Assembly (NCBI GenBank): GCA_002269645.1
Contig: NIVC01000731.1
Span: 310,001 to 374,000, forward strand
Direction: 5' to 3'
Source of the DNA: Macrostomum lignano
Taxonomy: Eukaryota
DNA length: 64,000 bases
Both the position numbers and the translations under genes were made by a program. Below, piece by piece: positions 12,713 through 41,800 of this stretch. The notes beneath the pieces were generated by a model. That model made no database searches. It saw only the letters and a list, made by a program, of their open reading frames with translations, and was not told the DNA's origin. Each line of letters starts with the position of its first letter. Positions within the stretch are counted from its first letter, which is position 1.

Positions 12713-13801
12713 TCAGTAGGCGGCGGCGCTCATGGGGACCAGCTGTGGCTGACAGCGGACTGGGCCGCTGCTGCCGCCAGTCCTGAGCAGGTCATTGTGG
12801 TTGGCCGTGGCGTTGAGGTCGAACTGCGGCGAGGCCGGCTGGTTGAAGGACTGCAGCGGCAGGCTGCCGTCCTCCGGCTCCGAGGGGCTCCGCTCGATGA
12901 CGGCGATGTGCCAGAGGCGCAGGAACTGGCAGGGCGCCAGCGCGCCGATTGTGGTGATGTTGAGCAGCGCGGAGAAGTACACCACGGCGGCCTTGATGAT
13001 AAAGCCGTAGGGCAGCTTCTGGGTCGTCTTCTCCCGGCCGAGGACGGCCTCCAGTTCGAGGTTCTCAGTGTACGCGGCGGTGCCGGAACTGAGCAGGGCG
13101 AAGGCGGCGAGCAGCAGGCAGGCGATGGTGCTGCCCTGGTGCACGGTGAGCTTCAGGTTGAGCACCATGGTGAGGCCGAGCGCGAGCCCCAGCACCCCCA
13201 TGTGCAGCCCGCCGGCGAAGTTGGTCTTCTTGTTGACGGAGAGCAGCACCCCGGAGGCGAAGGAGCTGAGGCTGGCGATGGAGGTGGTGATGATGACTGC
13301 GGTGCACACCACCACGGGCAGGCGGAAGTTCTCGAAGCGGCAGACGACGTAGTCGCGGTAGCGGTGGATCCGCCTGGTCAGCGCGATGCAGAGGCACACG
13401 GAGCTCACCGTGTTCACGAAGTTCATGAGGATCTTGGCGAAGTTGTCAATGGAGGAGCGGGCGTCGCTCCAGGTCTCCTTGGTCTCCAGGGCGCCCACCG
13501 TCAGGCAGATGGCGGACAGGATGGCCAGCGCGGAGGAGAACAGCAGGTTGCTGATGATGGACTTCTTGCGGATGCGGATAGTGGACACGATGACGCCCAG
13601 GAAGCCGACCAGGATGGACAGCAGTCCGCACAGGAACTGCAGCACCGAGAAGAAGGTGGTGAACCGCGTGTGGTTCTGGCGCACCAGCAGCTCCGGCAGC
13701 TGGCAGATGTTCATCCCGTTCAGGATGGAGCCAGTGGCGAGCACGGTGCCCGAGGTCAGCAGGCCGGGAAGGTCCAGGAACTGCCCTGGCAGCGCCTGCA
13801 T
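12713..13801 (-). CDS. Intronless multi-pass membrane protein (~8 TM), possibly a tandem MS4A/CD20-like duplication, 362 aa
   Basis: Continuous ORF with strong GC3 bias on the minus strand and eight hydrophobic stretches. The two halves each resemble a tetraspan unit (QFLCGLLSILVGFLG / FAGGLHMGVLGLALG). The family call is pattern-based. Confidence 0.75.
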   Translation of the reverse strand: MQALPGQFLDLPGLLTSGTVLATGSILNGMNICQLPELLVRQNHTRFTTFFSVLQFLCGLLSILVGFLGVIVSTIRIRKKSIISNLLFSSALAILSAICLTVGALETKETWSDARSSIDNFAKILMNFVNTVSSVCLCIALTRRIHRYRDYVVCRFENFRLPVVVCTAVIITTSIASLSSFASGVLLSVNKKTNFAGGLHMGVLGLALGLTMVLNLKLTVHQGSTIACLLLAAFALLSSGTAAYTENLELEAVLGREKTTQKLPYGFIIKAAVVYFSALLNITTIGALAPCQFLRLWHIAVIERSPSEPEDGSLPLQSFNQPASPQFDLNATANHNDLLRTGGSSGPVRCQPQLVPMSAAAY

Positions 13802-16400: not shown

Positions 16401-17066
16401 CCACATTCAGCTGCTTCCACAGGCAGCATTCACAAAATTGCATTGCAGTAACAATGCGGAATAGATCGACTTTTTCTCGTCCAGTCCAAGGACCCCCAAT
16501 GCGGCAGGGGTCCCTGACTTGGGCAATGGAAAGGAAGAGAGGCGCCGGTGGTGGAGTTCCGCAGGGTAAGGCGATCTGGCGAATCAATTATTTAAGTTTT
16601 ATCCCGGCTGAATCCAAAAGGCTGCCATGAGGGGTGTCCAGCGCCCCCCCCCCCCAAGTAATCCGCGGCTGAGTCCCAGGGAGGGCCAAGCGAGAGGATC
16701 TGCCCCAGAATCGGAGGGGGACTCACTGTGTTCCACTTTTACTTTGCCTGAAAGTCCGCTGGGAATTCGCTGCCCTAATCGGAAATTGCTGCTCTTTCGC
16801 CTGCCAAGCAACCAGCCGCCCCCCCCCCATCCTGGAGCGCTGCGGAGCATCCCGCCTATGCTGGGATTCAGGGGGACCCGCTGGGGACAGAAGTGGGGCG
16901 AGGGGGGCTCTGCAGACAGACAGGGAAATCTGCCGGCCACAAGGCCAGGCTGGAGATCGATGTCGCTCGCACCCTCCGCTCGGCATCAATGCGGCATTTT
17001 GCTGCAATCAGCGAGGGCCGGAGTTTTACAGGAGCAGCCTCGGAATCGGCACAAGATGCTCCGACT

Positions 17067-18253
17067 CTGACCCTAACCCTAACCCTGTAACCCTAACTCT
17101 CCAACCATAGCCCTAACCCTAACCTTGTAACCCTAATTCTCCAACCATAGCCCTAACCCTAACCCTGTAACCCTGACTTTAACCATAGCCCTAACCCTAA
17201 CCCTGTAACCCTGAGTCTTTAACCATAGCCCTAACCCTAACCCTGTAACCCTGAGTCTTTAACCATAGCCCTAACCCTAACCCTGTAACCCTGAGTCTTT
17301 AACCATAGCCCTAACCCTAACCCTGCAACCCTGAGTCTTTAACCAGAGCCCTAACCCCAACCCTGTAACCCTGACTCTAACCAGAGCTCTAACCCTAACC
17401 CTGTAACCCTGACTCTAACCATAGCCCTAACCCTAACCCTGTAACCCTGACTTTAACCATAGCCCTAACCCTAACCCTGTAACCCTAACTCTCCAACCAT
17501 AGCCCTAACCCTAACCCTGTAACCCTGAGTCTTTAACCATAGCCCTAACCCTAACCCTGTAACCCTGAGTCTTTAACCATAGCCCTAACCCTAACCCTGC
17601 AACCCTGAGTCTTTAACCAGAGCCCTAACCCCAACCCTGTAACCCTGACTCTAACCATAGCCCTAACCCTAACCCTGTAACCCTGACTCTAACCATAGCC
17701 CTAACTCTAACCCTGTAACCCTGACTCTAACCAGAGCTCTAACCCTAACCCTGTAACCCTGACTCTAACCATAGCCCTAACCCTAACCCTGTAACCCTGA
17801 CTCTAACCAGAGCCCTAACCCTAACTCTGTAACCCTGACTCTAACCAGAGCCCTAACCCTAACCCTGTAACCCTAACTCTCCAACCATAGCCCTAACCCT
17901 AACCCTGTAACCCTAACTCTCCAACCATAGCCCTAACCCTAACCCTGTAACCCTGACTCTAACCATAGCTCTAACCCTAACCCTGTCACCCTGACTCTAA
18001 CCATAGCCCTAACCCTAACCCTGTAACCCTGACTCTAACCATAGCCCTAACTCTAACCCTGTAACCCTGACTCTAACCAGAGCTCTAACCCTAACCCTGT
18101 AACCCTAACTCTCCAACCATAGCCCTAACCCTAACCCTGTAACCCTGACTCTAACCATAGCTCTAACCCTAACCCTGTCACCCTGACTCTAACCATAGCC
18201 CTAACCCTAACCCTGTAACCCTGACTCTAACCATAGCCCTAACTCTAACCCTA
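17067..18253. repeat. Interstitial telomere-like higher-order repeat, ~38-bp unit CCCTAA CCCTAA CCCTGTAA CCCTGA CTCTAA CCATAG, ~31 copies
   Basis: The unit is six hexamer-like blocks, two being the exact TTAGGG complement. Confidence 0.92.
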
Positions 18254-18722
18254 GATCGCTAACCAAAGAGCCCCCAAGGCGCACAGAAGTGCACCTCCCT
18301 GACGCTGAGAAAGTCAGGGCTGCTGTGCACCCTTGTGTAAGCGTGTTCAGGGGTCGAATTAAGTCAGTCAGTCCTAGATTGTCGTTGTTTTCAAAAGTAT
18401 TAAAACTTGTCAAGAGATCAGCAGGAGGCGGGTGACAGCATGCACTTTGCGCAGACGCTCTCATTTATCAGAAGCAAGTGGATCGGTTTGATAAATTCTT
18501 CGCTAAAAAGGGGGGGGGGGCAAAACATCGAGTCGATACACTCGAAAAAAATTTAATTCTCTAGCAATCAGTTTATTAGTAAATATGCAGGTTTCGCGGG
18601 CGGCTGCGCGGCCCTTATCGCTCTTTCATAGAAAGCCCGAGAGATAGGCGGGCCCGCCGAGTGTGAAGATAAAAAACACGCAAGGGCGTTTTTTTGGCGC
18701 AACGGCGCAGGTGAGAAGCGCG

Positions 18723-18736
18723 GTTTCCATGGCAAC
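18723..18736. promoter_or_regulatory. RFX X-box GTTTCCATGGCAAC
   Basis: Matches the X-box consensus; followed by a TATA-like CATAAAAG (~18783) and a strong donor CTG|GTGAGC (18921/18922). Function untested. Confidence 0.45.
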
Positions 18737-19109
18737 TGGGCCTCAATTTATCGCTGACGTCTTTGAGCCCCGCGCAGTCATTCATAAAAGAGCGCCTTCC
18801 CAGAGACAGACAAGAGGCGATTTGATTATCGGGGCACCCTTGCTTGTAGAAGAGCGAAATTTCTGCAACAGAAGACAGCACCGCCGGAATCTGCCAAACT
18901 TTTATTCTGATTCAGTCGCTGGTGAGCATTTGTTACCGCTGTTGGATGCTTTTAGCCTGGAAAATTGATCGAATGAAAATCAGTTTAAGTTTTTTTCGTT
19001 TCTTTACGACTTTATACTGATTCTGAAAGGCGCAGGATTGGGATTGGGAAAAAAGAAGCACCGGTTGTACGGTTGAAATCAAATAGGGAAATTAGAGCTG
19101 TTGGAAAAA

Positions 19110-20222
19110 AAGACACCTGTCAGACATGGGGAGAGACACCTGTCAGATATGGGAAGAGACACCTGTCAGATATGGGAAGAGACACCTGTCAGATATGGGA
19201 AGAGACACCTGTCAGACATGGGAAGAGACACCTGTCAGACATGGGAGGAGACACCTGTCAGATATGGGAAGAGACACCTGTCAGACATGGGGAGAGACAC
19301 CTGTCAGGCATGGGGAGAGATACCTGTCAGACATGGGGAGAGATACCTGTCAGGCATGGGGAGAGATACCTGTCAGGCATGGGGAGAGATACCTGTCAGG
19401 CATGGGGAGAGATACCTGTCAGGCATGGGGGAGAGATACCTGTCAGGCATGGGGAGATATACCTGCCAGACATGGGAAGATATACCTGCCAGACATGGGA
19501 AGATATACCTGTCAGGCATGGGGGAGAGATACCTGTCAGACATGGGGAGAGATACCTGTCAGACATGGGGGGAGATACCTGTCAGGCATGGGGAGAGATA
19601 CCTGTCAGACATGGGGGGGGAGAGATACCTGTCAGACATGGGGGAGAGATACCTGTCAGGCATGGGGAGAGATACCTGTCAGGCATGGGGAGAGATACCT
19701 GTCAGGCATGGGGGAGAGATACCTGTCAGGCATGGGGAGATATACCTGCCAGACATGGGAAGATATACCTGCCAGACATGGGAAGATATACCTGTCAGGC
19801 ATGGGGGAGAGATACCTGTCAGACATGGGGAGAGATACCTGTCAGACATGGGGGGAGATACCTGTCAGGCATGGGGGAGAGATACCTGTCAGACATGGGG
19901 GGGGAGAGATACCTGTCAGACATGGGGGAGAGATACCTGTCAGGCATGGGGGAGAGATACCTGTCAGGCATGGGGAGAGATACCTGTCAGACATGGGGAG
20001 AGATACCTGTCAGACATGGAGGGAGATACCTGTCAGGCATGGGGGGAGATACCTGTCAGACATGGGGAGAGATACCTGTCAGGCATGGGGAGAGATACCT
20101 GTCAGACATGGGGAGAGATACCTGTCAGACATGGAGTGAGATACCTGTCAGGCATGGGGGGAGATACCTGCCAGACATGGGGAGAGATACCTGTCAGGCA
20201 CGGGGAGAGATACCTGTCAGAC
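19110..20222. repeat. ~23-bp minisatellite GAGATACCTGTCAGACATGGGGA, ~47 copies
   Basis: Direct reading; variable G-run. Confidence 0.96.
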
Positions 20223-20370
20223 GTGTTACACACCTGTTAGAAAACGTCAGCCCTTCAAAGCCACGCCATAGAAGGTGGGAATTTTCAGCGGAGGAGACTC
20301 AGCGGAGCATCTGCTCCTGCATTCCTCTTAGGAAACAAAAATAAAAAAAGAAATCGAACTCATATTTCAG

Positions 20371-23300
20371 CACAGATACTAAATACCATAGATGGTTCAC
20401 TCGACTATATTTAGCAAAACTACTCTCTGTTCGGTAGTATGATCGTAAAAAGCTATATTTATTTATTCAACTGCATGTAGCTGTGAATAATTAAGCTAAA
20501 ACATTGATTATTGACGTTGTCTACACAATCGTAAGTCAAAATTTAATGCTACATTGCTACTGGTATACTCAGTAATTATTTTTATTTATTTAGCAAGCAA
20601 GCAACATTTTTGTGCATTGCAAGTGAGAAAAAAGAACAAAACGGGGTAATATTTATAATACAGTGAAATTAAAATTACCGTAGAATAAAAGGATGCGACT
20701 ATAAAGTTCTTAAGTTATACTAGTGTAACAAAGTTAGTGTAGTTTGCGAATTTTCCCCATAGTTTTCTTTTTTGGGCCACTGCACGCAGGTTCTTCATTT
20801 CACGTCGGCACCAATGGTGCAGCCGTAGGTGAGCAAAATTTTTAAAAACCTGATTATGCACCCGCGTGTGATGCAGCTCGCAGGCAGGCAGTGCTACTAA
20901 TTGTTCCCGGAGGTGGTTAACAAACCGAGCTGCCACACGAGGCTGGATTATGAAGCTGGATGTCAGGGCTGCGAACTCGGCTTCCATCTTCATAAATGCA
21001 ACAAGCGCCACCGGCGAGGGCGCAGTCAACCCGCGGAATGCATGCGAGTAGGTCTTGTGCTGGATGTGAACCCCTGCAGATTCGGATGCTGTAAGCAAAG
21101 AGTTGCACACCTGACAGTGAAGAACTCGGCTTCGCTTTAGCACATATCCGCCAACGTACTCAGCAGCTTCCAGCGAGACATTGCTTGCGCCCTGCCAGGA
21201 GTCCAGTTTTTTTTGGAGCAGCTGCTGCTGTGGTGCCTGGCATACAACACTGCTTGAGTTCTGTGGACCCGCTTTGGTAGTCACACAGTCTCCGGCACCG
21301 GTGGGGGCGCAGGCTGCTATGATGGCAGCCTCACAGTTGTCGTCTTCGCAGTTGCGAGACGTCGAGTCAGGCTGGGCCAGGCCGCTGGCAGCCACGGACC
21401 GCAGGGCACCGACGAAGGAGCTGAGCTCTGGTCTGTCGTTAAAACCGTTGTGCCCGCGGATGATGCAGAAAAGGTTCTGAAGAGGAGAATTGTACGATGC
21501 CCTTTGTTTCATCAATGCAAATTCTTGTACATTGCTGAACCACTAATTAGGGTGAAGTAATCTTTAAATATTTAATTATGGAAATATAGTCTCGCTTTTA
21601 ATAAATTTTGTGAACTTACCTCAACGTGATCTTGAGTAAATCGGCGAGTACACACGTAGTCAAAGTGGTGGTCCCGAATGAGAGTAGTGCACAGCTGCTT
21701 GGTAGCAGAAAGCGATAGGAGCCACCCTTCTTTGAATGGCATCGTAGGCTTAACAGCGCGCCCATTCAGTGGGAGAAAGCGCCAGCTCCGCACGAAGTCT
21801 TCCGCCTCTGTCAGACGGTCGATCTGCGCCGATAGAGTATCGCGATGAATCGGCTGCTGGAAGCCTTTGCCATAGAGATGCGCTGAGTTCAGCATGTCGA
21901 AAATGTCATTCAGACGCTTCGCAAATTCAGCTGTCTGCAACGCATCCTCAGATAACTCATTATGATGGACCAAAGTCCTGATACCACTTGCAACAGAATG
22001 GCTTAACACTTGTGCTGCGAGCGATACTTTCATCTTCTGACCCAGAGCTAAGCTGAAATGAGCGTCGGTGAGCTTGCTTGCTAATCGGAGAGATGGGCCG
22101 CTGTCGTTCTGATAAAACTGGATGAGATGCTGCCACTTAGCTAGCTTGCACTCGTTGAATTTGATGTCGTTCTTCATCAGGGCGTTTCTAGCATTTTTTA
22201 GGCAATGTGGGATGTCCACGATGACGTAGACTGGTTCACCGGTTACAGGGTGACGTAAAAAAGGATTTGCAGTGTCAGCCCGTCTGGAAAGGTGAGCCCA
22301 CTGGGTTGACTCTTGATCCGCAACCAGTGCAACGACCTTAATCCCGGCCTTGTGGCTAGCTGTCAGGCACTCATCAATAGCTATTCCAAATCCTTCTTGG
22401 CCAAGAGTTCGAAAAACAGGATAATATGCGATTGGTTGTTTCCAGTCCTGAAAGACTCCTCGAAGCACAGCGACGATGGCCTCGTTTACAGGTCTGGGCA
22501 ACTGCTCCTTGCTGTCATCAGCGGTTCGTGGATCGAATTCGCCGCCTAATTGTCGAACTTGATGGTAGCGGAATTTTCCACTTATTGCGGACCAGTCGGT
22601 AAGCTGACGAGCCTTTGTGATGCAGCTGAATTGAGCACGCAATGTCTTTTTTGGTCCAGCGCATGCCGCGACTGCGAACATCACGCCTGATCTTCTGCTG
22701 CATCAGACGAGTAGCTATTGAGCTGCTGCTACCCGACTGGACTGCTTTTGCTTTTTCTATTCGCGCTTGCATCTGTCGGATGGTGGTTTTTTGGCGGCGA
22801 ACTTTGCTGCGCAGCTGAGCGATGATGTTATTGCTTGGTTGTTCAGCATGACCTTGGTTGGTTGAGCTGTTGGCTGTTGGCATTGTCTGCTGCTCTTCGG
22901 CCTGTGGCGGCTCACCATCGGTGCTGTTGAATGGCTGCAGTTCAGGTGGATAGAGATTGTCAGCCTCTTCGTCACTGCGAAAAACCAAATGTGTCAGGTC
23001 ATGTGCAATGAGGCGGGGTAGAGTCAGCTCCCTGTCTGGAACGGCATTCCATCGCAAACGTGTGGTATATTCATGTCGCAGAGAAGGACAGCTGTAATCA
23101 TTGTCAGTAAAATGCACACTGCACACTCGCAATCCCATCTTGCGAATGGCTCCGATGTCCAAGTCGATTTCCAGCATTTGCCTCCATCGATTCGCAACTC
23201 CGTCGTCCGCTGGAAACCTGTGCATTCGCACAGCCACTCCCTCGTCCGTTAGAGATTGCGCTGTATGGGTGCAGGTGGCTGCACAGCAGCGCTTTGAGCT

Positions 23301-23773
23301 GAATTCCATGTCAGTATGGTGATTGCAAGAAGCGTTGCTGGTGTTTTTGTCGTTCTTGCACTGCTTGCTGGTAAAGTGCGAAGTAAAATCTTTTCTTTCT
23401 CCGTCCTGCCTTATTACTTTAAACTCCGTATCTCGTCCCACTTGACTGCTAGCTAGAAACGAAGTCAATCGATTTCTTCGACTGTCTATGGCCAAGACCA
23501 ACGCCTTTTTGGGGTGGGTGCAGATTTTACTAGTGGTTTTTACGCCTGAGAATTCCGATCCACTGCCAAGCTTGGCCATAGATAAAAGAATTGAAAGCGC
23601 CAAGGTTGTGCGCGTGTGACGCGGGCATCTAGACCATCATTCTCTCCAAATATTTTATGTCAAGACAAAAAATAGAGCAAATATGCGCTTATGCCACTGG
23701 ACAGAGAGTAGCAAATCAAACTGACGCATAAAGATAATGCTGAGTGAACCATCTAGGGTATTTATTATCTGTG
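20371..23773 (-). mobile_element. P-superfamily (THAP9-like) DNA transposon, 3,403 bp, 32-bp TIRs, 8-bp TSD TATTTCAG
   Basis: Left TIR CACAGATACTAAATACCATAGATGGTTCACTC (20371-20402) versus reverse complement of 23742-23773 CACAGATAATAAATACCCTAGATGGTTCACTC (30/32). TATTTCAG at 20363-20370 and 23774-23781. CA...TG termini and an 8-bp TSD are typical of P elements. Confidence 0.95.
20715..23579 (-). pseudogene. THAP-domain P-element transposase, frameshifted and internally deleted; intron 21477-21619
   Basis: THAP zinc finger (RCCAATC...HRFP...W...RVCSVHF), coiled coil, LPSSSTIRRR, then a frame switch to WKQPIAYY, VADQ, DIPHCLKNARN, KMKVSLAAQVLSHSVA, TQDHVE|NLF (GAG|GTAAGT ... TCTTCAG|AAC). The xFDEM first-catalytic-Asp segment is absent. 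Confidence 0.88.
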
Positions 23774-23822
23774 TATTTCAGACACAGCCTTCATCGCCCA
23801 GATCGCGCCGACTCGCTGAGCC

Positions 23823-26800
23823 ATGCGGTCTGCCCAGTCTGAGCTGGCGGCAGCGCTGCTCATCTGCCTCGCCGCTGGGTAAGAAGCTCAACAGCGAAGC
23901 CTCAGGAACAACTGAAATCCATTTAAAATTTAATATACGCTCGTAATAATCTTAATAAATACCGATCGAATATTTCTGTTCCAGATTGGTCAGCGGCCAA
24001 GGTCACATAAGTGAGTAATCGTTTTTACAAACTGAAGAACCTTGTTTTCTTCTTAGAAAATCCGTGACTTTCTTAAAAATCACCGCTAAGATCGACTGCG
24101 AGGATCAGTACAACCTCTTCCTGTGAGTGGGTCAGGGATGGGTCAAGTGGGTCGGGGATGGTTCAATGGGTAGGGATGGGTTAAGTAGGTCAAGGATAGG
24201 TCAAGTGGGTCAGGGATGGGTCAAGTAGCTCAGGGATGGGTCAAGTAGGTCAAGGATGGGTCAAGTGGTTCAGGGATGGGTCAAGTAGGTCAGGGATGGG
24301 TCAAGTGGGTCAGGGATGGGTCAAGTGGTTCAGGGATGGGTCAAGTAGGTCAGGGATGGGTCAAGTGGGTCAGGGATGGGTCAATTGAGTCAGGGTGGGT
24401 CAATCACAACCTCTTCCTGTGAGTGGGTCAAGGCTGGGTCAAATAAGTCAGGGATGAATCCTTTAGATTGGAAAAAACTCCGTTTTTGAAAACATCACAC
24501 TACACGTTAATGCAACGTTTGAATAGGACCTCGGCAATCTCTCAGCGAAGGAGTTGTTGAATATCTCGACGATCTTGAATGCACCATGAAACAGTACACG
24601 CGATCAAGGCATCAAAACAAGTCCATGAGAGTAGCTGACGTGCAGGCGGAGCCCGCACTGCAGTCGCCTTGTTTGCCAGGGAGTTTATCGCCAACTTAAC
24701 AAGCGCCGCAGACCCAACAAAGGCAGCAGTGACGGCTGCATTCAGAGTAATTTGAGTAATTTAGTAATTTATGACCCACAGCCCCGATAAGCGGCTGCCA
24801 CGCCAGAAAAACTTTATTGCCCTCTGTCGAAAGACGAAATAAAAAAATATCTCGCATAAACAATTGCAAGCTGTTTGCAACTGAGCACAGCTGGCCTACC
24901 CAAGTCTGAGTCCCTCCCGAGCGTCTCCGCTGGCGCCACGGCTATCTGCATGGCAGCCGGGACCGACTGCTGACCCCAAAGGCAGGCTTGTCACCGCAGA
25001 TAGCAGCTCAGCTGTCTAATCTCCATTTCATTTTTACACTCTCTTTGAGCCACACGACTGGACCGAGTGCTGCGGGTTTGGAGCTGTTCGACTGCATTGC
25101 ATCGAAATAGAGATAGCTAGCTGGTTGCCATGGCAACTGTCTGCTCACTATCAGCCAGGCCCGGCTCTCACCTCGCACCCGCCCCGCCCTCGCCTGCTCA
25201 GGGCCGCCCGTCACGGCCAAGCCTGGAGAATGCAAGCCACCCACTGTGCTCAACGCCGCTAAGATCGACTGCGAGGATCAGTACAACCTCTTCCTGTGAG
25301 TGGGTCAGGGGTGGGTCAAGTGGGTCAGGGATGAGTCAAGTGGGTCAAGGATGGGTTAAGTGGGTCAAGGATGGGTTAAATGGGTCAGGGGTGGGTCAAT
25401 CCCAACCTCTTCCTGTGAGTGGGTCAGGGGTGGGTCTAGTCAGTTAGGGGTTGGTCAATCACAATCTCTTTCTGTGAGTGGGTCGAGGCTGGGTCAAATG
25501 GGTCAGGGATGGGTCAAGTGGGTCAAGGATGAGTTAAATGGGTCAGGGGTGGGTCAATCCCAATCTCTTCCTGTGAGTGGGTCAGGTGGGTCAAGTGGGT
25601 CAGGGGTAGATCAAGTGAGTCAAGGTGTGTCAAGTAAGTTTGACTGAGGTGGGTTAACTGAGTCAAGAGTGGGTTAGGCGTGGGTCAAGTATGCAACACA
25701 TCCTCTTTCAGTGAATGGGTCAAAGCTGGGCAATCTGAAACCCAACCATCCGACCGCTGACCCAGTGAATGTTAAAACCCTCGACCCTTCTCTAAAATAA
25801 GACATTCCCCCGCATCCGCAGTGACTGCACAATCGAGTGCAAGCAGGGCTACTGGTTCGAGAGCGAGAAGATCCGTGAGGAGGTCTCCTGCACACACTAC
25901 GATCTGCAGTGGGACCGCGACGTTGGCGACTGCCTGCCAAGGTGCAGCCCCGGCTGCCGCAACGGCGGCGTCTGCGAAGCCCCCAACCAGTGCCGCTGCC
26001 CGCCCGGCTACGGAGGCCCGCTGTGCGAGATGGGTGAGCCGCTTGCTTCATGCACAGCTTTCTGCGGGTTTCTACTGGCTCTGAGTAGGCCAGCGAGCCT
26101 GTGGTTGCCGGTTTTTGAGCGCTACTTTACCGACTGACCTTTATTGGGAAACTCAATCATCTCCCGGACACTCAATCACCCGGACTCTCAATGACCCGGA
26201 CACTCAATGACCCGGACACTCATGGGAACCTCAATCACCCGGACACTCAATGGGAACCTCAATGACCCGGACACTCAATGACCCGGACACTCAATGACCC
26301 GGACACTCAATGACCCGGACACTCAATGGGAACCTCAATCACCCGGACACTCAATGGGAACCTCAATCACCCGGACACTCAATGGGAACCTCAATCATCC
26401 GGACACTCAATGGGAACCTCAATCACCCGGACACTCAATGGGAACCTCAATCATCCGGACACTCAATGGGAACCTCAATCATCCGGACACTCAATGGGAA
26501 CCTCAATCATCCGGACACTCAATGGGAACCTCAATCATCCGGACACACAATGGCAACCTCAATCATCCGGACACACAATGGCAACCTCAATCACCCGGAC
26601 ACACAATGGCAACCTCAATCATCCGGACACTCAATGGGAACCTCAATCACCTGGACACACAATGGCAACCTCAATCATCCGGACACTCAATGGGAACCTC
26701 AATCACCTGGACACACAATGGCAACCTCAATCATCCGGACACTCAATGGGAACCTCAATCATCCGGACACACAATGGCAACCTCAATCACCCGGACACAC

Positions 26801-29800
26801 AATGGCAACCTCAATCACCCGGACACACAATGGCAACCTCAATCATCCGGACACTCAATGGGAACCTCAATCACCCGGACACTCAATGGGAACCTCAATC
26901 ATCCGGACACTCAATGGGAACCTCAATCATCCGGACACTCAATGGGAACCTCAATCATCCGGACACTCAATGGGAACCTCAATCATCCGGACACACAATG
27001 GCAACCTCAATCATCCGGACACACAATGGCAACCTCAATCACCCGGACACACAATGGCAACCTCAATCATCCGGACACTCAATGGGAACCTCAATCACCT
27101 GGACACACAATGGCAACCTCAATCATCCGGACACTCAATGGGAACCTCAATCACCTGGACACACAATGGCAACCTCAATCATCCGGACACTCAATGGGAA
27201 CCTCAATCATCCGGACACTCAATGGGAACCTCAATCACCTGGACACACAATGGCAACCTCAATCATCCGGACACTCAATGGGAACCTCAATCATCCGGAC
27301 ACACAATGGCAACCTCAATCACCCGGACACACAATGGCAACCTCAATCATCCGGACACACAATGGCAACCTCAATCATCCGGACACACAATGGCAACCTC
27401 AATCATCCGGACACACAATGGCAACCTCAATCACCCGGACACACAATGGCAACCTCAATCATCCGGACACTCAATGGGAACCTCAATCACCTGGACACAC
27501 AATGGCAACCTCAATCATCCGGACACTCAATGGGAACCTCAATCACCGTGACGCAACCAATGCACGCCTCCTACAGTCATCGTCAGCAGCACGCGGGACC
27601 CGTACCCGGACCTGAGCAGCACGCCGGCCCCGCCGCTGCGCAACTCCACCTCCGCGTGGTGCTTCGTCTGGGGCGACTCCAGCTACAGGACCTTCGACGG
27701 GTCGCAGTTCGCCTTCTGCGGGCACTGCAGCTACCAGCTGTTCGCAGACCTACACGGCGACCAGTTCCAGGCCACGCTGCACAACCCCGATGCCGGGTGC
27801 AACGCAACCGCCTGCTCCCGCCGGCTCACCATCCAGGTCGGCTCCGTCCGACTGGAGCTCAGCAACCGTCAGCGGCTGGACTACTCGCTCAACTGCGGCC
27901 GGCACGACGTCTGCGCCAACCTGCGCAGCAGCAGCATGCCGTTCGCGGCCAGCAACTTGGAGGTGACGCGGACAGGGCCCTGGGTGCTGGTGCGCAGCTC
28001 GCTAGGCTTCCAGATCCGCTGGGATGGCGGCATGTACGTTCAGGCAGAGCTGGACGGCCGCTACAAGCAGCGGACTGGCGGCCTTTGCGGTCGTTACAGC
28101 GACGATGTTAGGGACGACTTCACCACGCCGGGCGGCGACCTGGCGGCCACGCCTGAGGAGTTCGGCCGCAGCTGGGCGCTGCAGGACCGGGACGACGTCT
28201 GCCACCGGGGCAGCCGCTGTCCGTGAGTTCTTCTGGGGCTTTTAAATGTCAAAATTTGTTGCAGGTGTTTGAAAATTTGTTAGTCTGAGGCAGAGACTCG
28301 CGCCTCGACTCCTGCTCCCATTCCGTGCGCGACCACATTGGTTTGCTGCTCGTGAACGACAATTGATCGGGGATTGCCGTGCGATCAATACCTATGAGGG
28401 TGAACTCCGAAGGCGCAGAGAGTGTACATGTTAGATATTAGAGGGAGTGGCTGTGTGCACCCTAGCGCACTCTAAGCGCCATTGTTACACAACCGGCGAG
28501 AGGCATTACTGCCCATTCTGTCCACTCCTCTGAGGCCTGAGCAGGCACACAAGCGCGCGGATACGTACGCAGTCATACGCACAGGCACTCACTCACACGG
28601 GAGTGTACAGAGGCCATAACTTTACTTATCGTTAGGCATGTACACTTCACTGTGCCTTGGGGGTTGGCCCCTATATATAGTATTATATGGCATTGCGACT
28701 ATAAAAGTGCGGATCAATAATCTATTAGTTTTATTGATCTTTTGAAGTTCTGTGCATCCAGAAGGTCAGGGCAAACGGTCTAGTGTTCCTATTACCTAAA
28801 CGGTTTTTATGAGCCAACGCTTTCCTGGACCACGCCACAGGGACACTTGCCCGACGGACACTCGCGATCAGGCCAGGAGCATGTGCCAGCGCCTGCTCCT
28901 GCAGGACAGCGCATTCAAGCACTGCCAGCGCGACGTGAGCGCCATAGACTACATCGAGGCCTGCGTCCGCGAGTTCTGCGACTGCGACCCGGCCACGGCG
29001 GCCAACAGCCCGGAGAACTGCGTCTGCAACAGCCTGCAGGCATACGCTGAGCACTGCAAGATTGAGAAGCAGCAGCCTATCAACTGGCGAACTGACGCGC
29101 GGTGCCGTGAGTATCGCTGAATGGGGACTTTTTCACGAACTGACAGAAACGTATTCTCAGGTTTTGGTTATTGAGCTTCAAATCACAGTGTGTATGTTTT
29201 GCATGCGTGGTATTTTAATGGGCCTGAGGTGATCATTTCCGATGCAACCATCCCGCAGCCTACAATTGTACCAATGGCCGGCAATACGACATCTGCGGCG
29301 AGAGCTGCAGCCGAACCTGCAACCAGCGGGTGACCAACTGCGACATGGAGTACTGCATCGAAGGCTGTGTCTGCCCTCGCGGACAGCTGTGGGACGAGCA
29401 CGGCCAGCGCTGCGTGGTGGAGCGGGACTGCCCCTGCGAGCACGGCGGGCAGTTCTATCCGCCAGGCTCCGAGCTGCGGCAGGCCTGCCAGCTCTGCCGT
29501 TGCCAAGGCGACTGGGTCTGCCAGGATGAGCAGTGCCTGGCGGTGTGCCACGCTGTCGGTGATATTCACTACCAGACTTTTGACGGGAGAGATTACTCGT
29601 CCAATGTGAGTTGACCGCCCTTTGGTTCAGCAGGAAGTGTAGTGGTGTTGATTTTTGTACCCATGAGCACTGATTCAGTTAATATTTTATTGCATTGTGT
29701 GGCTATAGAGCCCAACTGACATGCGTATTTGCTCAAGCCAGAATGTTTATTGCGCAACTATAACTCCAACTATAATTTAGACTTTTATGCTACAATGTAG

Positions 29801-35800: not shown

Positions 35801-38800
35801 AACGCCCGGAACTTCTACCGTCTGTGAGGAGTGGACCGACTGGATCAACCTGGACAACCCGTCTACCGGTGAAGGCGACATCGAGACCATCGACAAGGCC
35901 AGAGACCGCTGGCCCGGATTCTGTCCTCAGCCAATCAGCATCCAGTGCAGAGACTCCGACAGCAAGAAGGACGTCACCGACATTCCTCAGGAGCTCATCT
36001 GCGATGTGAACCAGGGCCTTGTGTGCAAGAACGAGCACCAGTACCCGACCAAGTGCCATGACTACGAGGTCCGCTACTTCTGCGAGTGCTTCGGTAGGTT
36101 TCTCTCTGTTTTCTCTCTGTCGGGCTGCCTAGACTATTTTTGTCCCTGATTCCAAATACCTTATCGTTACCATCTCTTAAAAAGATACGTTCTACGCTCC
36201 TACACCTAGTAGACTTTGCATGTCACAACAGAATTTAATGTAATTTAAAATTACGAGCAAGTAAACATTTTCTGTATTCTAACTATTATCAGATAATTTA
36301 CGTAGCTTAGATAAACTTAATCTTGTGCTCAACGACTAATGAAATGAGGCTTAACTTGAAGGTTTACAACCGCAAGAAATTTGAATTTCAGAGACGCAGA
36401 CTCCTTCAAAATCAACAAGGACTTCGAGCCCTTCAACTGCGTCTCAGTCTCCAGAGACTCCGAGCCCGAGAACTCCGTCTCAGTCTCCAGAGACTCCGAG
36501 CCCGAGAACTCCGTCTGAGTCGCCAGAGACTCCGAGTCCGAGAACTCCGTCTCAGTCTCCAGAGACTCCGAGCCCGAGAACTCCGTCGCCGTACACGCCT
36601 TCGGCAACGCCCGGAACTTCTACCGTCTGTGAGGAGTGGACCGACTGGATCAACCTCGACAACCCGTCTACCGGTGAGGGCGACATCGAGACCATCGACA
36701 AGGCCAGAGACCGCTGGCCCGGATTCTGTCCGCAACCAATCAGCATCCAGTGCAGAGACTCCGACAGCAAGAAGGACGTCACCGATATTCCTCAGGAGCT
36801 CATCTGCGATGTGAACCAGGGCCTTGTGTGCAAGAACGAGCACCAGTACCCGACCAAGTGCCTTGACTACGAGGTCCGCTACTTCTGCGAGTGCTTCGGT
36901 GAGTAATCGTTTATTCGGCATGATGTTTTGAATAGCGGGAAGTTGGCTCAATTTAATATTTTTATGTTAACGGTAACTACTCTGAGGGTCTAGTTGGACT
37001 AAATTTGAACATATGCAGGGATCTAATGTTTCAATATTTTTTCCATAAATGTTTGTACCTGAAGGCTGTTGATGCATGCATCCCAAGACAATAGCTCAAA
37101 CGAGTAGCAGCTTGAGTAAAAGTAAGCATTGTATAACGCCGCAAAACAGTTGCTAAAATCTTGTGTGAGTTTTTCAATAAATAAGATAATAGAAATTCCT
37201 GATGTTATAAAATGACTTCCTGCCGTTTTTAGAGACAGAAAGTGTGGCGACAACACGAAGTTCACAAGGAACACAAAGTACTGAAAGTACGCCATTCACG
37301 TCACCCAACGGCTCCTCGACAACACCGCAAACTGCGACGGCGACTTTTATGACTTCAGAAAGAACGCAAGCAACGCCTGAGTCCAGTACAACAGCTGAGC
37401 CTCAGGAGCCATCCTCATCTGCTCAAACGCGCACTACTTGGCCAGGAATCAGCCCCACAAAAACATCACCGGGACTGATTACCGATACTCCCGTTCCTTG
37501 CATTCAAACGGCGCCAACATTCCGGGTATTCAACAATGGAGAAAGAATTTTTCACAGTGCTGCTGATTTGATTAGGAAAAGCAAGTTGAACTGCCAGTAT
37601 ATTGTAAACTTGGAATGCGACGCTACAGATGGCAGCGACGCTAGAGTGGACTGCAGCAAAACCAATGGTTTTACTTGCAACCCGATGCTTCAAATGTTTC
37701 ATGAATGTCCGGCGTTTGACATCAGTTTGACCTGCCTGCTAGACTCTGACCACTGCAGAAATGCTACTTCAACACTACCTGCAACGCCTTCCGAGCCAGG
37801 CATTTCGTCAACGCCAAATGAGGCATCAAGCCCACGAACTCCGTCTGAGTCGCCAGAGACTCCGAGCCCGAGAACTCCGTCTCAGTCTCCAGAGACTCCG
37901 AGCCCGAGAACTCCGTCTCAGTCTCCAGAGACTCCGAGCCCGAGAACTCCGTCTCAGTCGCCAGAGACTCCGAGCCCGAGAACTCCGTCTCAGTCTCCAG
38001 AGACTCCGAGCCCGAGAACTCCGTCTCAGTCTCCAGAGACTCCGAGCCCACGAACTCCGTCTCAGTCTCCAGAGACTCCGAGCCCGAGAACTCCGTCTCA
38101 GTCTCCAGAGACTCCGAGCCCGAGAACTCCGTCTCAGTCTCCAGAGACTCCGAGCCCGAGAACTCCGTCGCCGTACACGCCTTCTGCAACGCCCGGAACT
38201 TCTACCGTCTGTGAGGAGTGGACCGACTGGATCAACCTGGACAACCCGTCGACCGGTGAAGGCGACATCGAGACCATCGACAAGGCCAGAGACCGCTGGC
38301 CCGGATTCTGTCCTCAGCCAATCAGCATCCAGTGCAGAGACTCCGACAGCAAGAAGGACGTCACCGACATTCCTCAGGAGCTCATCTGCGATGTGAACCA
38401 GGGCCTTGTGTGCAAGAACGAGCACCAGTACCCGACCAAGTGCCTTGACTTCGAGGTCCGCTACTTCTGCGAGTGCTTCGGTGAGCATTTGTTCAGTTTG
38501 AACTAAAATTTGACGATAACTACCCTGATTTTGAAGTATCATTCGGCCTGTGTTAATTAGTTGTAAACAGCCACACTACGCTTGTAAGACACCCTTTGTT
38601 TTATTGCACTGCGACTTGCTCTCACACCTCGCATTGTCGCTCGTAGCGCACATTACGTGCACAATTTTAAAACTTTTTATTGACTGCCAGCATTCGGGCG
38701 GAGCAGTGCAGCGGTAAAGAAATTTAATAGACCTGAAACCTTTAGCAAATTAAACTAAGCTTTAAATTTTATTCAGCTTCATCAGCTGTCTGATAAAGTA

Positions 38801-41800
38801 AACTGCCAGAGCAGATGATTGGTTTCCCAACAAGCGCGACCCACCGATGCCCAAAAGTTACTCGGAAGGAACAGAAAGTCGGCAAGTCCGGCAGACTGGG
38901 AGGAAAATTTAACAGAATCTGTCGGGCCAACAAACCAAGGCAATATTTTGCGCTACCAAAATTGCGCGAAAAACTGTCACAGCCACTACTCGTTTTGCTG
39001 TGATGATGAGGTCGCCTTTATGCCCCCATTTTAAACAAATTTAACTGCTTCGTATGACGCTGGATATATATACGAGTACCAGGATTGAAAGTTTGGAAAT
39101 TTTCATTTCAGAAACGCAGACTCCTACGGAATCAACAAGGACTCCGAGCCCTCGAACTCCGTCTCAGTCTCCAGAGACTCCGAGCCCAAGAACTCCGTCT
39201 CAGTCTCCAGAGACTCCGAGCCCAAGAACTCCGTCTCAGTCTCCAGAGACTCCGAGCCCGAGAACTCCGTCTCAGTCTCCAGAGACTCCGAGCCCAAGAA
39301 CTCCGTCTCAGTCTCCAGAGACTCCGAGCCCGAGAACTCCGTCTGAAGCACCGGAAACTCCGAGCCCGAGAACTCCGTCTGAAGCACCGGAAACTCCGAG
39401 CCCGAGAACTCCGTCTGAAGCACCGGAAACTCCGAGCCCGAGAACTCCGTCTCAGTCTCCAGAGACTCCGAGCCCGAGAACTCCGTCTCAGTCTCCAGAG
39501 ACTCTGAGCCCAATAACTCCGTCTGAGTCGCCAGAGACTCCGAGTCCGAGAACTCCGTCTCAGTCTCCAGAGACTCCGAGCCCGAGAACTCCGTCTCAGT
39601 CTCCAGAGACTCCGAGCCCGAGAACTCCGTCTGAAGCACCGGAAACTCCGAGCCCGAGAACTCCGTCTCAGTCTTCAGAGACTCCGAGCCCGAGAACTCC
39701 GTCTCAGTCTCCAGAGACTCCGAGCCCAAGAACTCCGTCTGAGTCGCCAGAGACTCCGAGCCCAAGAACTCCGTCTCAGTCTCCAGAGACTCCGAGCCCG
39801 AGAACTCCGTCTCAGTCTCCAGAGACTCCGAGCCCAAGAACTCCGTCACCATACACGCCTTCTGCAACGCCCGGAACTTCTACCGTCTGTGAGGAGTGGA
39901 CCGACTGGATCAACCTCGACAACCCGTCTACCGGTGAGGGCGACATCGAGACCATCGACAAGGCCAGAGACCGCTGGCCCGGATTCTGTCCTCAGCCAAT
40001 CAGCATCCAGTGCAGAGACTCCGACAGCAAGAAGGACGTCACCGACATTCCTCAGGAGCTCATCTGCGATGTGAACCAGGGCCTTGTGTGCAAGAACGAG
40101 CACCAGTACCCGACCAAGTGCCTTGACTTCGAGGTCCGCTACTTCTGCGAGTGCTTTGGTGAGCTTTTACGTTTCATCCTTGACTTTTTTTTGCATGCTG
40201 TAAGTCTGAAGGTTTTGATATCTTGGAGGGAAATTGTCCTCAGTGAAATTCTTTTCAGCTGCTCTTCATTCCAAGCGGGCCTTTACCGGTATAAGAAAAA
40301 ATTAGAATTTCAAAAAATCGAATATGTGAGAAAAGAAGCATTTTTGCAGATACGCATAGCTTTTTAGGAGTTTGAATCACGGCAAACACTTTGGTGGGTT
40401 TTATGTGAGCGTTTTTTGCATTTTGCGTAGTTTGACGTTTTAAAAATATAGTACTGCTTTGTACGCTCGTAGATGTGAAAACAACAGAGCTATCGCGCGA
40501 GGAAGAACTGCTGGTACAGACACTCATCTGTATCATTCTCGCCTTACAGATTTCCGCACACAACCTACCAGACCAACTGAAAATAGCTCTACATCCTCAA
40601 GACTACCAGAGGAGAGCACCACATCGCCAAGAGTACCAGAGGAGAGCACCACATCGCCAAGAGCACCAGAGGAGAGCACCACATCGCCAAGAGTACCAGA
40701 GGAGAGCACCACATCGCCAAGAGCACCAGAGGAGAGCACCACATCGCCAAGAGTACCAGAGGAGAGCACCACATCGCCAAGAGTACCAGAGGAGAGCACC
40801 ACATCGCCAAGAGCACCAGAGGAGAGCACCACATCGCCAAGAGTACCAGAGGAGAGCACCACATCGCCAAGAGTACCAGAGGAGAGCACCACATCGCCAA
40901 GAGTACCAGAGGAGAGCACCACATCGCCAAGAGTACCAGAGGAGAGCACCACATCGCCAAGAGCACCAGAGGAGAGCACCACATCGCCAAGAGCACCAGA
41001 GGAGAGCTCTACATCGCCAAGAGCACCAGAGGAGAGCTCTACATCCCCAAGAGTACCAGAGGAGAGCTCTACATCCCCAAGAGTACCAGAGGAGAGCTCT
41101 ACATCCTCAAGAGTACCAGAGGAGAGCACCACATCGCCAAGAGCACCAGAGGAGAGCTCACCATCCAAAGCCACTGGATTAACTGGTTTTACCACGACAC
41201 CCGAGCGAGAAGGCCCCTCTCCAACTACATCCGTCTGCGAGGAGTGGACCCCATGGATAAACCTTGACCGGCCCAGCACAGGCCATGGCGACGTGGAGAC
41301 CATGGAGAAGGCCAGACGCAAATGGCCGAACTTCTGTCCAAAGCCAATGAAAATCCAGTGCAGAGACGCAGGCAGCAAGATTTCAGTTGACCAGGTGTCT
41401 CAGGAGCTGCTCTGCGATCTGGAGCACGGCCTGCTGTGCATCAATGAGAACCAGTACCCGAACAACTGCAACGACTATGAAATCCGATTCTACTGCGACT
41501 GCTACGGTGAGTCCAACCAGTGCCAATGTGTTGAGAGTTGCAACTCCGACCAGTGTTTTTTCAACTCTAATCTCAATTACAATACCTTGATTAATTTTTA
41601 CCATTCTGGCTACAGTTCAACAGCGCTCTATGAGTCGCTATCAATTAGAGAGGCGTAGACAAAATATTTTTATCTACTCGTTTCAAAGGCTGATAAAGAG
41701 GTATTGATAGTTAACTTACCGACCAAGTATTTGATCAGATAAGCATGCAGTGTAATATACAGAGTGCCGGCCTCATGGCAAGGCTCTGTGCGCGCTGATT

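What the first reader, a model, noticed from the sequence alone, without database searches (positions are those of the whole stretch)
20363..23825. P element inserted into, and duplicated, the apparent splice acceptor of the mucin's first coding exon
Seen: the 8-bp TSD is TATTTCAG, the same form as this gene's other acceptors (GAATTTCAG, CATTTCAG, ATTTTCAG), and the right copy ends 41 nt before the ATG. The T-rich right TIR end (TATTTATTATCTGTG) restores a plausible acceptor context. Inference: splicing (cis from the donor at 18922, or spliced-leader trans-splicing) to the right copy removes the whole 3.4-kb element and rescues the gene, while use of the left copy traps the transcript in the transposon. 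The insertion would thus be a two-way splice switch, or a self-hiding insertion, on a 35-kb gene.
Basis: partly seen in the sequence, partly recalled or inferred. Interest (0 to 1): 0.82.

Follow-up and report, generated by a model that had tools for sequence, protein, structure and literature searches.

The report
P transposon on a likely splice acceptor
A recently moved, broken copy of a P-type DNA transposon in the flatworm Macrostomum lignano sits 41 bases upstream of a mucin gene's start codon, on an 8-base sequence that looks like a splice acceptor and was duplicated by the insertion; this is a tidy but ordinary single insertion, and whether the gene is rescued by splicing is untested.

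Summary
A 3,403-bp P-superfamily transposon (20371-23773, transposase on the minus strand) has 32-nt terminal inverted repeats and a perfect 8-bp duplication, TATTTCAG, whose right copy ends 41 nt before the mucin ATG. The window is Macrostomum lignano. Six other copies in the public assembly are 99.6-99.8% identical. This copy has a private 170-bp deletion that removes the first catalytic Asp, so it is non-autonomous.

The octamer is acceptor-like. It fits the published M. lignano spliced-leader acceptor motif [T/C]TNCAG. On a matrix trained on 20 introns of this window it ranks in the top 0.07-0.4% of all AGs. The right copy, backed by the inverted repeat, scores as well as the rebuilt empty site.

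No RNA evidence could be reached. The proposed donor at 18922 is no better than chance. A start-site insertion, typical of P elements, is not excluded. Seven other insertions from two families show a GT....AC-type target and no acceptor bias, so this is one event and not a family habit. "Self-hiding insertion" is plausible. "Splice switch" is unsupported. I rate it an ordinary, recent insertion that offers a neat natural test of acceptor choice; interest is low to moderate.

The parts
20363..20370 (+). Left copy of the 8-bp target-site duplication, TATTTCAG. It keeps the original upstream context (A-rich, ...GAAATCGAACTCA).
   Evidence: Acceptor score is 4.4 bits in situ; the intron side is identical to the empty site and only bases +1 to +3 changed.
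20371..23773 (-). Internally deleted, non-autonomous P-superfamily DNA transposon of 3,403 bp. The full-length family element is 3,574 bp.
   Evidence: It is 99.6-99.8% identical to six M. lignano copies (L001-L006).
20371..20402 (.). Terminal inverted repeat at the 3' end of the element in transposase orientation.
   Evidence: It is identical to the 3' repeat of all six other copies.
23742..23773 (.). Terminal inverted repeat at the 5' end of the element. Its outer end, TATTTATTATCTGTG, now forms positions -23 to -9 of the right acceptor copy.
23774..23781 (+). Right copy of the duplication, TATTTCAG, 41 nt upstream of the mucin ATG.
   Evidence: It scores 8.5 bits and is the best acceptor candidate anywhere between 20300 and the ATG.
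22537..23312 (-). First part of the transposase coding sequence: THAP domain, coiled region and helix-turn-helix, ending at ...PLPSSSTI.
   Evidence: Pfam THAP E=2.5e-10. It matches P0015 residues 91-344 almost exactly.
22530..22540 (-). Junction of a private 170-bp deletion. It removes P0015 residues ~345-405, including the FDGM motif that aligns with FDEM (D230) of the Drosophila transposase, and it shifts the frame.
21620..22536 (-). Rest of the RNase H-like domain, with the GTP-binding insertion domain, ending at the donor QDHVE|GTAAGT.
   Evidence: Pfam TNP-like_GBD E=1e-24 and RNaseH_N E=1.5e-10, profile positions 48-131 only.
21477..21619 (-). Transposase intron (GTAAGT...CCTCTTCAG).
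   Evidence: The junction reproduces the annotated protein P0015.
20715..21476 (-). Last transposase exon. A 1-bp deletion in an A run at about 20774 changes the last ~13 codons.
23782..23878 (+). First coding exon of the mucin-like gene: a 41-nt ATG-free leader, then ATG at 23823 and the signal peptide MRSAQSELAAALLICLAAG. The 5' limit at 23782 is inferred, not shown.
   Evidence: The downstream model gives a VWD domain, E=2.7e-27.
18921..18922 (+).
   Evidence: It scores 3.9 bits and is in the top 1.2% of GTs; about 1.5 such sites are expected by chance in 2.1 kb. The stretch 18730-18945 is ATG-free.
19073..20270 (+). 23-bp minisatellite between the candidate donor and the insertion site. 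Each unit carries an ATG, so a transcript starting upstream of the array needs cis- or trans-splicing to yield a translatable leader.

Best explanation
SHOWN:
- A young, non-autonomous copy of a ~3.57-kb P-superfamily cut-and-paste transposon (M. lignano gene family 'Mlig018125') inserted antisense, 41 nt upstream of the start codon of a gel-forming-mucin-like gene.
- The insertion made the 8-bp duplication TATTTCAG.

- It is used for spliced-leader trans-splicing, for cis-splicing from an upstream non-coding exon, or for both, since flatworm acceptors are often shared.
- The staggered cut spanned this site, so repair regenerated the acceptor on both sides of the element.

INFERRED, about 45-50%: the downstream copy still works.
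- It keeps positions -8 to +n of the original site and gains a T-rich repeat end with a TTTAT branch-like motif at -18.
- The spliceosome can therefore still join a leader to ACACAG..., which makes the whole element part of the outron or intron and leaves the mRNA unchanged.

Use of the upstream copy would give leaders that run into antisense P sequence. That sequence has 65 ATGs, AATAAA signals and cryptic donors, so such transcripts would mostly be unproductive.

The position is a single chance event in an open 5' gene region. It is not a targeting property of the family and not an evolved switch.
For: Identity of the element:
- THAP, RNaseH_N and GTP-binding-domain Pfam hits.
- 91% identity to the M. 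lignano protein P0001, lowered by the deletion; about 99.7% DNA identity to six copies.
- The full-length sibling P0015 matches the Drosophila P transposase structure 6P5A at E=1.3e-29, with FDGM, VADQ and QDHVE aligned to D230, D303 and E531 (residues named in PMC7776569).
- 8-bp duplications flank all complete copies.
- Private 170-bp deletion.

Acceptor reading:
- TTTCAG fits the top M. lignano spliced-leader acceptor motif [T/C]TNCAG, and 30-39% of genes are trans-spliced (PMC8629364, PMC5730564).
- Flatworm acceptors are UUNYAG and are shared between cis- and trans-splicing (PMC12582326).
- The window-trained matrix gives 8.9 bits for the empty site, rank 6 of 9,165 AGs, above 18 of 20 leave-one-out true acceptors. 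The next-best AG in the 2.1 kb upstream scores 5.1.
- The result is robust to removing look-alike acceptors from training: top 0.4%.
- The right copy scores 8.5 bits and is the best acceptor between 20300 and the ATG.
- Other acceptors of this gene have the same short TTTCAG with an A-rich upstream context.
- The 41-nt leader is ATG-free with an in-frame stop, whereas the upstream minisatellite is full of ATGs.
Against: - There is no RNA evidence. The mucin 5' end is absent from the 5.8-billion-protein collection, and the only database model of the gene (P0022) starts at an internal Met.
- The splice matrix is small and weak; the leave-one-out median is only 2-3 bits.
- The same sequence can be read as a core promoter: TCAGAC as an initiator, with an A-rich TATA-like AATAAAAAAAG about 27 nt upstream. 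Drosophila P elements prefer promoters (PMC7776569).
- If the spliced leader were added here, its terminal AUG would open an out-of-frame upstream reading frame across the mucin ATG (sequence). Its context is weak, however.
- Trans-spliced genes in M. lignano are enriched for conserved and stem-cell genes rather than lineage-specific secretory genes (PMC8629364).
- The upstream copy keeps the native intron-side context and could outcompete the downstream copy.
Confidence: 0.6

Rival explanations
1. Start-site insertion. The octamer is the initiator of a TATA-like core promoter, and the mucin has a short unspliced 43-nt leader. As Drosophila P elements typically do, the element landed at the transcription start. 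It now separates the promoter from the coding region by 3.4 kb, giving a hypomorphic or null allele. The acceptor resemblance is coincidental.
For: - TCAGAC fits a YYANWY-type initiator, and AATAAAAAAAG lies at 20340-20350, with its T about 27 nt upstream (my own motif knowledge).
- P elements are highly prevalent around promoters (PMC7776569).
- The region from 20178 to the ATG is ATG-free in the empty allele, so an unspliced leader is viable.
- The proposed upstream donor is no better than chance.
- No 5' model of this gene exists in any annotation I could reach.
Against: - Both promoter motifs carry little information, and nothing is known about initiator motifs in M. lignano (no mention in PMC5730564).
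- The site scores in the top 0.07-0.4% of AGs as an acceptor and has the same form as verified acceptors of this gene.
- 30-39% of genes in this species are trans-spliced.
- The other family copies examined are not obviously at gene starts.
Confidence: 0.25
2. Neutral or irrelevant insertion. This mucin copy is poorly expressed or not expressed, for example a redundant duplicate in a hidden-polyploid genome, or the insertion lies in untranscribed spacer. It then has no splicing consequence in either direction.
For: - The 5' part of the gene is missing from the transcriptome-based NCBI annotation and from all protein sources searched.
- The genome has large duplicated fractions (PMC5730564, PMC8629364).
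- The gene shows structural flux: a duplicated pseudo-exon at 24085-24125 and a 7,368-bp internal tandem duplication.
- The insertion is very young, with 5 private substitutions, so selection has had little time to act.
Against: - The exons examined are open and encode intact signal peptide, sushi-like, EGF, VWD, C8, TIL and CysD units.
- A 98%-identical model exists in UniRef for the ML2 assembly.
- Absence from an annotation is weak evidence for a repeat-rich 35-kb gene.
Confidence: 0.1
3. Regulated two-way splice switch. The host or the element exploits the duplicated acceptor to toggle mucin expression.
For: There are two identical acceptor octamers 3.4 kb apart with different contexts. 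In L006 an annotated neighbour's coding sequence begins 36 bp inside the 5' end of another copy and reads outward, which suggests transcripts cross that end.
Against: - The copy is defective and only about 0.15% diverged.
- None of seven other insertions sits on an acceptor.
- No conserved regulatory feature was found.
- A switch needs selection over time, and nothing suggests this insertion is fixed.
Confidence: 0.03

Closest known systems
Drosophila melanogaster P element and THAP9-type P-superfamily transposons
   Same: - N-terminal THAP domain.
- RNase H-like D-D-E domain split by a GTP-binding insertion domain.
- Terminal inverted repeats of about 31-32 bp plus subterminal inverted repeats.
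- 8-bp target-site duplications and an intron-containing transposase gene.
- Internally deleted non-autonomous derivatives.
- Duplications with GT....AC outer positions, like the Drosophila target GTCCGGAC (PMC7776569, PMC2577343).
   Different: - Flatworm host.
- 3.57 kb with a transposase of about 870-960 aa.
- The inverted repeats begin CACAG rather than CATGATG and differ at 2 positions between the two ends.
- This particular duplication (CTGAAATA/TATTTCAG) is the poorest match to the family's target pattern.
- No literature on Macrostomum P elements was found in the library.
Introners: DNA transposons that create introns by co-opting a splice site from their target-site duplication
   Same: The target-site duplication supplies a functional splice signal, so the element can be removed from the RNA without changing the mRNA (PMC9860276).
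   Different: - Introners are short non-autonomous families present as hundreds of introns, and they carry the complementary splice site.
- Here one 3.4-kb element carries no dedicated splice site and creates no new intron. It would only lengthen an existing outron or intron.
- The family shows no such pattern at seven other sites.
Transposon insertions removed from pre-mRNA by splicing (C. elegans Tc1, maize Ds/dSpm, Drosophila 412 in vermilion); cited from my own knowledge
   Same: An insertion in transcribed sequence is tolerated because cryptic or nearby splice sites remove most or all of it.
   Different: Those cases use cryptic sites in or near the element and usually leave scars in the mRNA. 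Here an exact copy of the native acceptor lies at the element's edge, so removal could be scarless. Involvement of spliced-leader trans-splicing would be unusual.
Spliced-leader trans-splice acceptors of M. lignano and other flatworms
   Same: The motif is [T/C]TNCAG / UUNYAG, it lies a short distance upstream of the ATG, and the upstream sequence is A/T-rich (PMC8629364, PMC12582326).
   Different: No SL read evidence exists for this site. The SL's terminal AUG would be out of frame with the mucin reading frame.

Membership tests
P-superfamily DNA transposon (P element / THAP9-like) | N-terminal THAP zinc-finger DNA-binding domain | tested here: met
   Pfam PF05485, E=2.5e-10, residues 9-92 of the reading frame starting at 23312.
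P-superfamily DNA transposon (P element / THAP9-like) | RNase H-like catalytic domain with a GTP-binding insertion domain; homology to Drosophila P transposase | tested here: met
   PF21788, E=1e-24, and PF21787, E=1.5e-10. The full-length sibling P0015 matches 6P5A at E=1.3e-29 over residues 252-736.
P-superfamily DNA transposon (P element / THAP9-like) | Intact D-D-E catalytic triad (needed for autonomy) | tested here: not met
   In siblings, FDGM, VADQ and QDHVE align to D230, D303 and E531. The window copy lacks the first Asp because of a 170-bp frameshifting deletion. It is therefore a family member but non-autonomous.
P-superfamily DNA transposon (P element / THAP9-like) | 8-bp target-site duplication | tested here: met
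   The window copy and 5 of 5 complete sibling copies have 8-bp duplications; L005 has one mismatch. The second family also has one.
P-superfamily DNA transposon (P element / THAP9-like) | Terminal inverted repeats of about 31 bp, plus subterminal inverted repeats | tested here: met
   The terminal repeats are 32 nt and 94% complementary. The subterminal repeats are 20420-20445 and 23686-23711.
Spliceosomal 3' splice site (SL trans-splice or cis acceptor) | Sequence fits the species' acceptor consensus | tested here: met
   TTTCAG matches [T/C]TNCAG (PMC8629364). The matrix score is in the top 0.07% of AGs with all training sites and the top 0.4% without look-alikes.
Spliceosomal 3' splice site (SL trans-splice or cis acceptor) | RNA junction (SL or upstream exon) ending at the AG | not testable with these tools
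   No transcripts or gene models cover the 5' end. The public M. lignano browser tracks would settle it (PMC5730564).
Spliceosomal 3' splice site (SL trans-splice or cis acceptor) | For cis use: a credible upstream donor and first exon | tested here: inconclusive
   The donor at 18921 scores 3.9 bits, and about 1.5 such sites are expected by chance. The candidate exon is ATG-free and is preceded by an X-box and CATAAAAG.
Introner-type intron-generating transposon | Family copies recurrently sit as introns, with splice sites supplied by the element or its duplication | tested here: not met
   Seven other insertions show no acceptor at the duplication. The one donor-like duplication (L007, GTAAGCTC) is not at an exon edge.
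Core-promoter (TATA + initiator) start site | Mapped transcription start at the TCAG, with upstream TATA | tested here: inconclusive
   Only low-information motif matches could be read from the sequence. No start-site data are reachable.

The most novel reading that the evidence does not exclude
A cut-and-paste transposon that lands exactly on a spliced-leader/cis 3' splice site regenerates that site through its own target-site duplication. It becomes part of the outron and is invisible in the mRNA. The locus then carries two identical acceptors 3.4 kb apart, competing for the spliced leader in vivo. This would show that trans-splicing buffers 5'-end insertions, and it would offer a natural assay of acceptor choice in a flatworm. 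An added twist is that outward transcription from the element's 5' end, hinted at in L006, could feed the downstream acceptor.
Probability: 0.35. Interest if true: 0.45.

Novelty: new member of a known kind. Interest (0 to 1): 0.3.

Why it matters
If the downstream acceptor copy is used, this locus is a clean natural example of splicing absorbing a transposon that lands on a splice signal. In a trans-splicing animal the outron would do the absorbing. Such buffering could help explain the tolerance of 5'-end insertions in repeat-rich, trans-splicing genomes.

Independently of that, two things are useful for work on the species:
- The data document a very young and probably still mobile P-superfamily family in M. 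lignano. There are intact 957-960-aa copies, about 99.7% identity between copies, and a Drosophila-like GT....AC target. This matters for genome stability and for transposon-based tools in this transgenic flatworm model.
- The claim is cheap to test with existing public RNA-seq and SL-read tracks.

Tried and rejected
1. I searched the spliced mucin N-terminus (346 aa) for transcripts or orthologues and found no hit. The only database model, P0022, starts at an internal Met and has no contig on record.
2. I tried to reach the same locus or an empty-site paralogue through the neighbouring single-exon gene at 12716-13801; it is not on record. An exact scan of metagenome contigs for the rebuilt empty site gave 0 matches.
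3. I looked for an SL RNA gene and for any Rfam family in 17000-26500. Neither was found.
4. I checked whether the donor at 18922 is homologous to the identical GTGAGCATTTGT donors inside the mucin at 38480 and 45848. Only the 14-mer matches and the flanks diverge, so I rejected homology.
5. I checked whether the window copy is one of the six annotated NCBI copies. It is not; the flanks differ.
6. I considered a family-wide splice-site preference after seeing the donor-like duplication GTAAGCTC in L007/L008. I rejected it because all three frames are closed just upstream, so the site is intronic.
7. I considered that the two inverted-repeat mismatches indicate age. I rejected this because they are family-wide.
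8. A literature search for P elements in Macrostomum found no paper.

Full report
WHAT IS THERE

TATTTCAG occurs at 20363-20370 and 23774-23781, directly outside a pair of 32-nt inverted repeats at 20371-20402 and 23742-23773. No other copy is in the window and none is expected by chance. The right octamer ends 41 nt before the ATG at 23823. That ATG opens a clear signal peptide, MRSAQSELAAALLICLAAG, and an in-frame TGA lies 6 nt upstream of it.

The 3,403 bp between the octamers encode a transposase on the minus strand, antisense to the mucin. It has a THAP domain (E=2.5e-10), part of the TNP-like RNase H N-terminal domain and the GTP-binding insertion domain (E=1e-24). It is interrupted by one intron at 21477-21619.

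ORGANISM AND FAMILY

The best protein hits are Macrostomum lignano proteins BOX15_Mlig018125g1-g6. I fetched all six loci from assembly GCA_002269645.1. Their elements are 99.6-99.8% identical in DNA to the window copy, but none shares its flanks.

Full-length copies (L002, L004) are 3,574 bp and encode 957-960-aa proteins. P0015 matches the Drosophila P transposase structure 6P5A at E=1.3e-29. Its FDGM, VADQ and QDHVE motifs align to the catalytic D230, D303 and E531 (residues from PMC7776569). Every complete copy has an 8-bp duplication. This is therefore a young P-superfamily family that is probably still mobile.

The window copy is defective:
- A private 170-bp deletion near 22536 removes residues ~345-405 of P0015, including the first catalytic Asp, and shifts the frame.
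- It also has a 1-bp deletion at about 20774 and five private substitutions.
- It keeps both ends, so it could be moved in trans.

IS THE OCTAMER A SPLICE ACCEPTOR?

I built the 5' gene model by hand. The exons are 23823-23878, 23985-24010, 25202-25295, 25822-26033 and 27577-28222, giving signal peptide, sushi-like, EGF and VWD units (VWD E=2.7e-27). I extended it by spliced alignment of P0022, a 98%-identical partial UniRef model. This gave 20 distinct acceptors and 20 donors.

| Site | Score (bits) | Rank among AGs |
|---|---|---|
| Rebuilt empty site | 8.9 | 6th of 9,165 |
| Right copy | 8.5 | top 0.08% |
| Left copy | 4.4 | top 1.1% |
| Next-best AG in the 2.1 kb upstream | 5.1 | not computed |

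- The empty site scores above 18 of 20 leave-one-out true acceptors.
- The left copy differs from the empty site only at bases +1 to +3.
- Without the four look-alike acceptors in training, the empty site is still in the top 0.4%.
- The right copy is the best candidate anywhere between 20300 and the ATG.

The literature agrees with this reading. M. lignano trans-splices 30-39% of its genes to one 35-nt leader, and the top motif at those acceptors is [T/C]TNCAG (PMC8629364, PMC5730564). Flatworm SL acceptors are UUNYAG and are widely shared with cis-splicing (PMC12582326).

A rough likelihood argument (my inference) runs as follows. About 0.005-0.03 chance AGs of this quality are expected within 100 nt of an ATG, whereas about 10% of true acceptors score this high. 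With a prior of 35-45%, this gives roughly 65-90% for a real acceptor. I lower this to about 65% because of the promoter rival described below.

WHAT IS NOT SUPPORTED

- The donor at 18921/18922 scores 3.9 bits. About 1.5 donors of that quality are expected by chance in the 2.1 kb upstream, so it cannot be told from noise. The stretch 18730-18945 is ATG-free, however, and is preceded by an X-box and CATAAAAG.
- The family has no acceptor bias. In transposase orientation the duplications are GTAAAGAC, GTTTAATC, GCACTAGC, GTCTAGAC/GTCTGGAC, GTCAGCAG and CTCAAGTG (3' side only), plus GAGCTTAC for a second family in L007/L008. This is a GT....AC pattern like the Drosophila target GTCCGGAC (PMC2577343). 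The window's CTGAAATA is the poorest match.
- A useful control came from the L007 duplication. It reads GTAAGCTC on its host gene's strand and so looks like a donor, yet it lies inside an intron. Splice-like octamers do arise by chance.
- The 'trap' is not simple. On the mucin strand the element has strong cryptic donors at 22067, 20828 and 22598 (7.7, 7.0 and 6.9 bits), AATAAA at 20684 and 21600, and 65 ATGs. Outcomes could include extra leader exons or early polyadenylation.
- If the spliced leader were joined here, its terminal AUG would be out of frame with the mucin ATG, with no stop before it. This is a mild argument against trans-splicing, although the AUG context is weak.

THE MAIN RIVAL

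TCAGAC with an A-rich AATAAAAAAAG about 27 nt upstream can be read as an initiator plus a TATA-like box. Drosophila P elements favour promoters (PMC7776569). On that reading the insertion splits the promoter from the gene and no splicing is involved. I cannot exclude this and give it about 25%.

LIMITS

No RNA evidence, no 5' gene model and no empty-site allele were reachable.

VERDICT

This is a new member of a known kind, namely a P-superfamily insertion at a gene's 5' end. Interest is low to moderate, and a cheap decisive test exists in public M. lignano SL and RNA-seq tracks.

Noticed in passing
window 18723-18736 and 25124-25137: There are two near-perfect palindromic X-box (RFX-type) motifs, GTTTCCATGGCAAC and GTTGCCATGGCAAC. 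One lies upstream of the candidate non-coding exon and one in intron 2 of the mucin. The expected number in the window is 0.03, and 0 of 100 shuffles had two. This may point to RFX control of this secreted mucin-like gene.
   Followed up: partly
window ~17080-18250: A tandem satellite with a unit of about 38-41 bp built around vertebrate-type telomere repeats (CCCTAACCCTAACCCTGTAACCCTGACTCTAACCATAG) lies just upstream of the mucin 5' region. It may be an interstitial or subtelomeric array.
   Followed up: no
window 19073-20270: A 23-bp minisatellite (AGAGATACCTGTCAGGCATGGGG, about 50 units) produces spurious 340-420-aa open reading frames in all three plus-strand frames and carries an ATG in every unit.
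   Followed up: partly
window 24085-24125 versus 25259-25297, with 20-bp minisatellites at 24126-24460 and ~25300-25700: The 3' part of coding exon 3 (…AKIDCEDQYNLFL|GTGAGT) and its downstream minisatellite are duplicated 1.2 kb upstream as a pseudo-exon inside intron 2.
   Followed up: partly
window 38174-43439 versus +7368: There is a near-perfect 7,368-bp tandem duplication of mucin-repeat and CysD exons, with exact runs of 432, 4,448 and 317 bp. It is either a very recent duplication or an assembly artefact.
   Followed up: partly
L006 7126-9182 (minus strand); equivalent to window 23737: The NCBI-annotated neighbour of another copy has its coding sequence starting at the ATG 36 bp inside the element's 5' end and reading outward across the inverted repeat into the flank. 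The 231-aa first reading frame looks like Arg-rich nonsense. This hints that transcripts leave the element's 5' end, which is the same geometry as at the mucin.
   Followed up: partly
L001, L003, L005: Other copies are damaged in different ways. L001 lacks the 5' inverted repeat and has a 1-bp frameshift in the THAP exon. L003 carries about 385 extra bp in the 5' region. L005's two duplication copies differ by one base. L002 and L004 are the full-length 3,574-bp copies, and their annotated proteins are 957-960 aa.
   Followed up: partly
L007/L008 3472-7117: A second M. lignano P family (48% protein identity, inverted repeat CACAGATACTAGAACAAC…, 8-bp duplication GAGCTTAC) lies inside a receptor-type tyrosine phosphatase gene on the opposite strand. 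The same insertion with the same immediate flanks appears on two scaffolds, which I take to be duplicated assembly of one locus.
   Followed up: partly
window 5300-6169 (+) and 61565-62203 (-): Neighbouring genes are a FAM220-family reading frame (E=6.8e-35) and the C-terminal exon of a mitoguardin (Miga) homologue (E=7.1e-59). The membrane-protein-like reading frame at 12716-13801 (-) has no Pfam hit and no exact database record.
   Followed up: no
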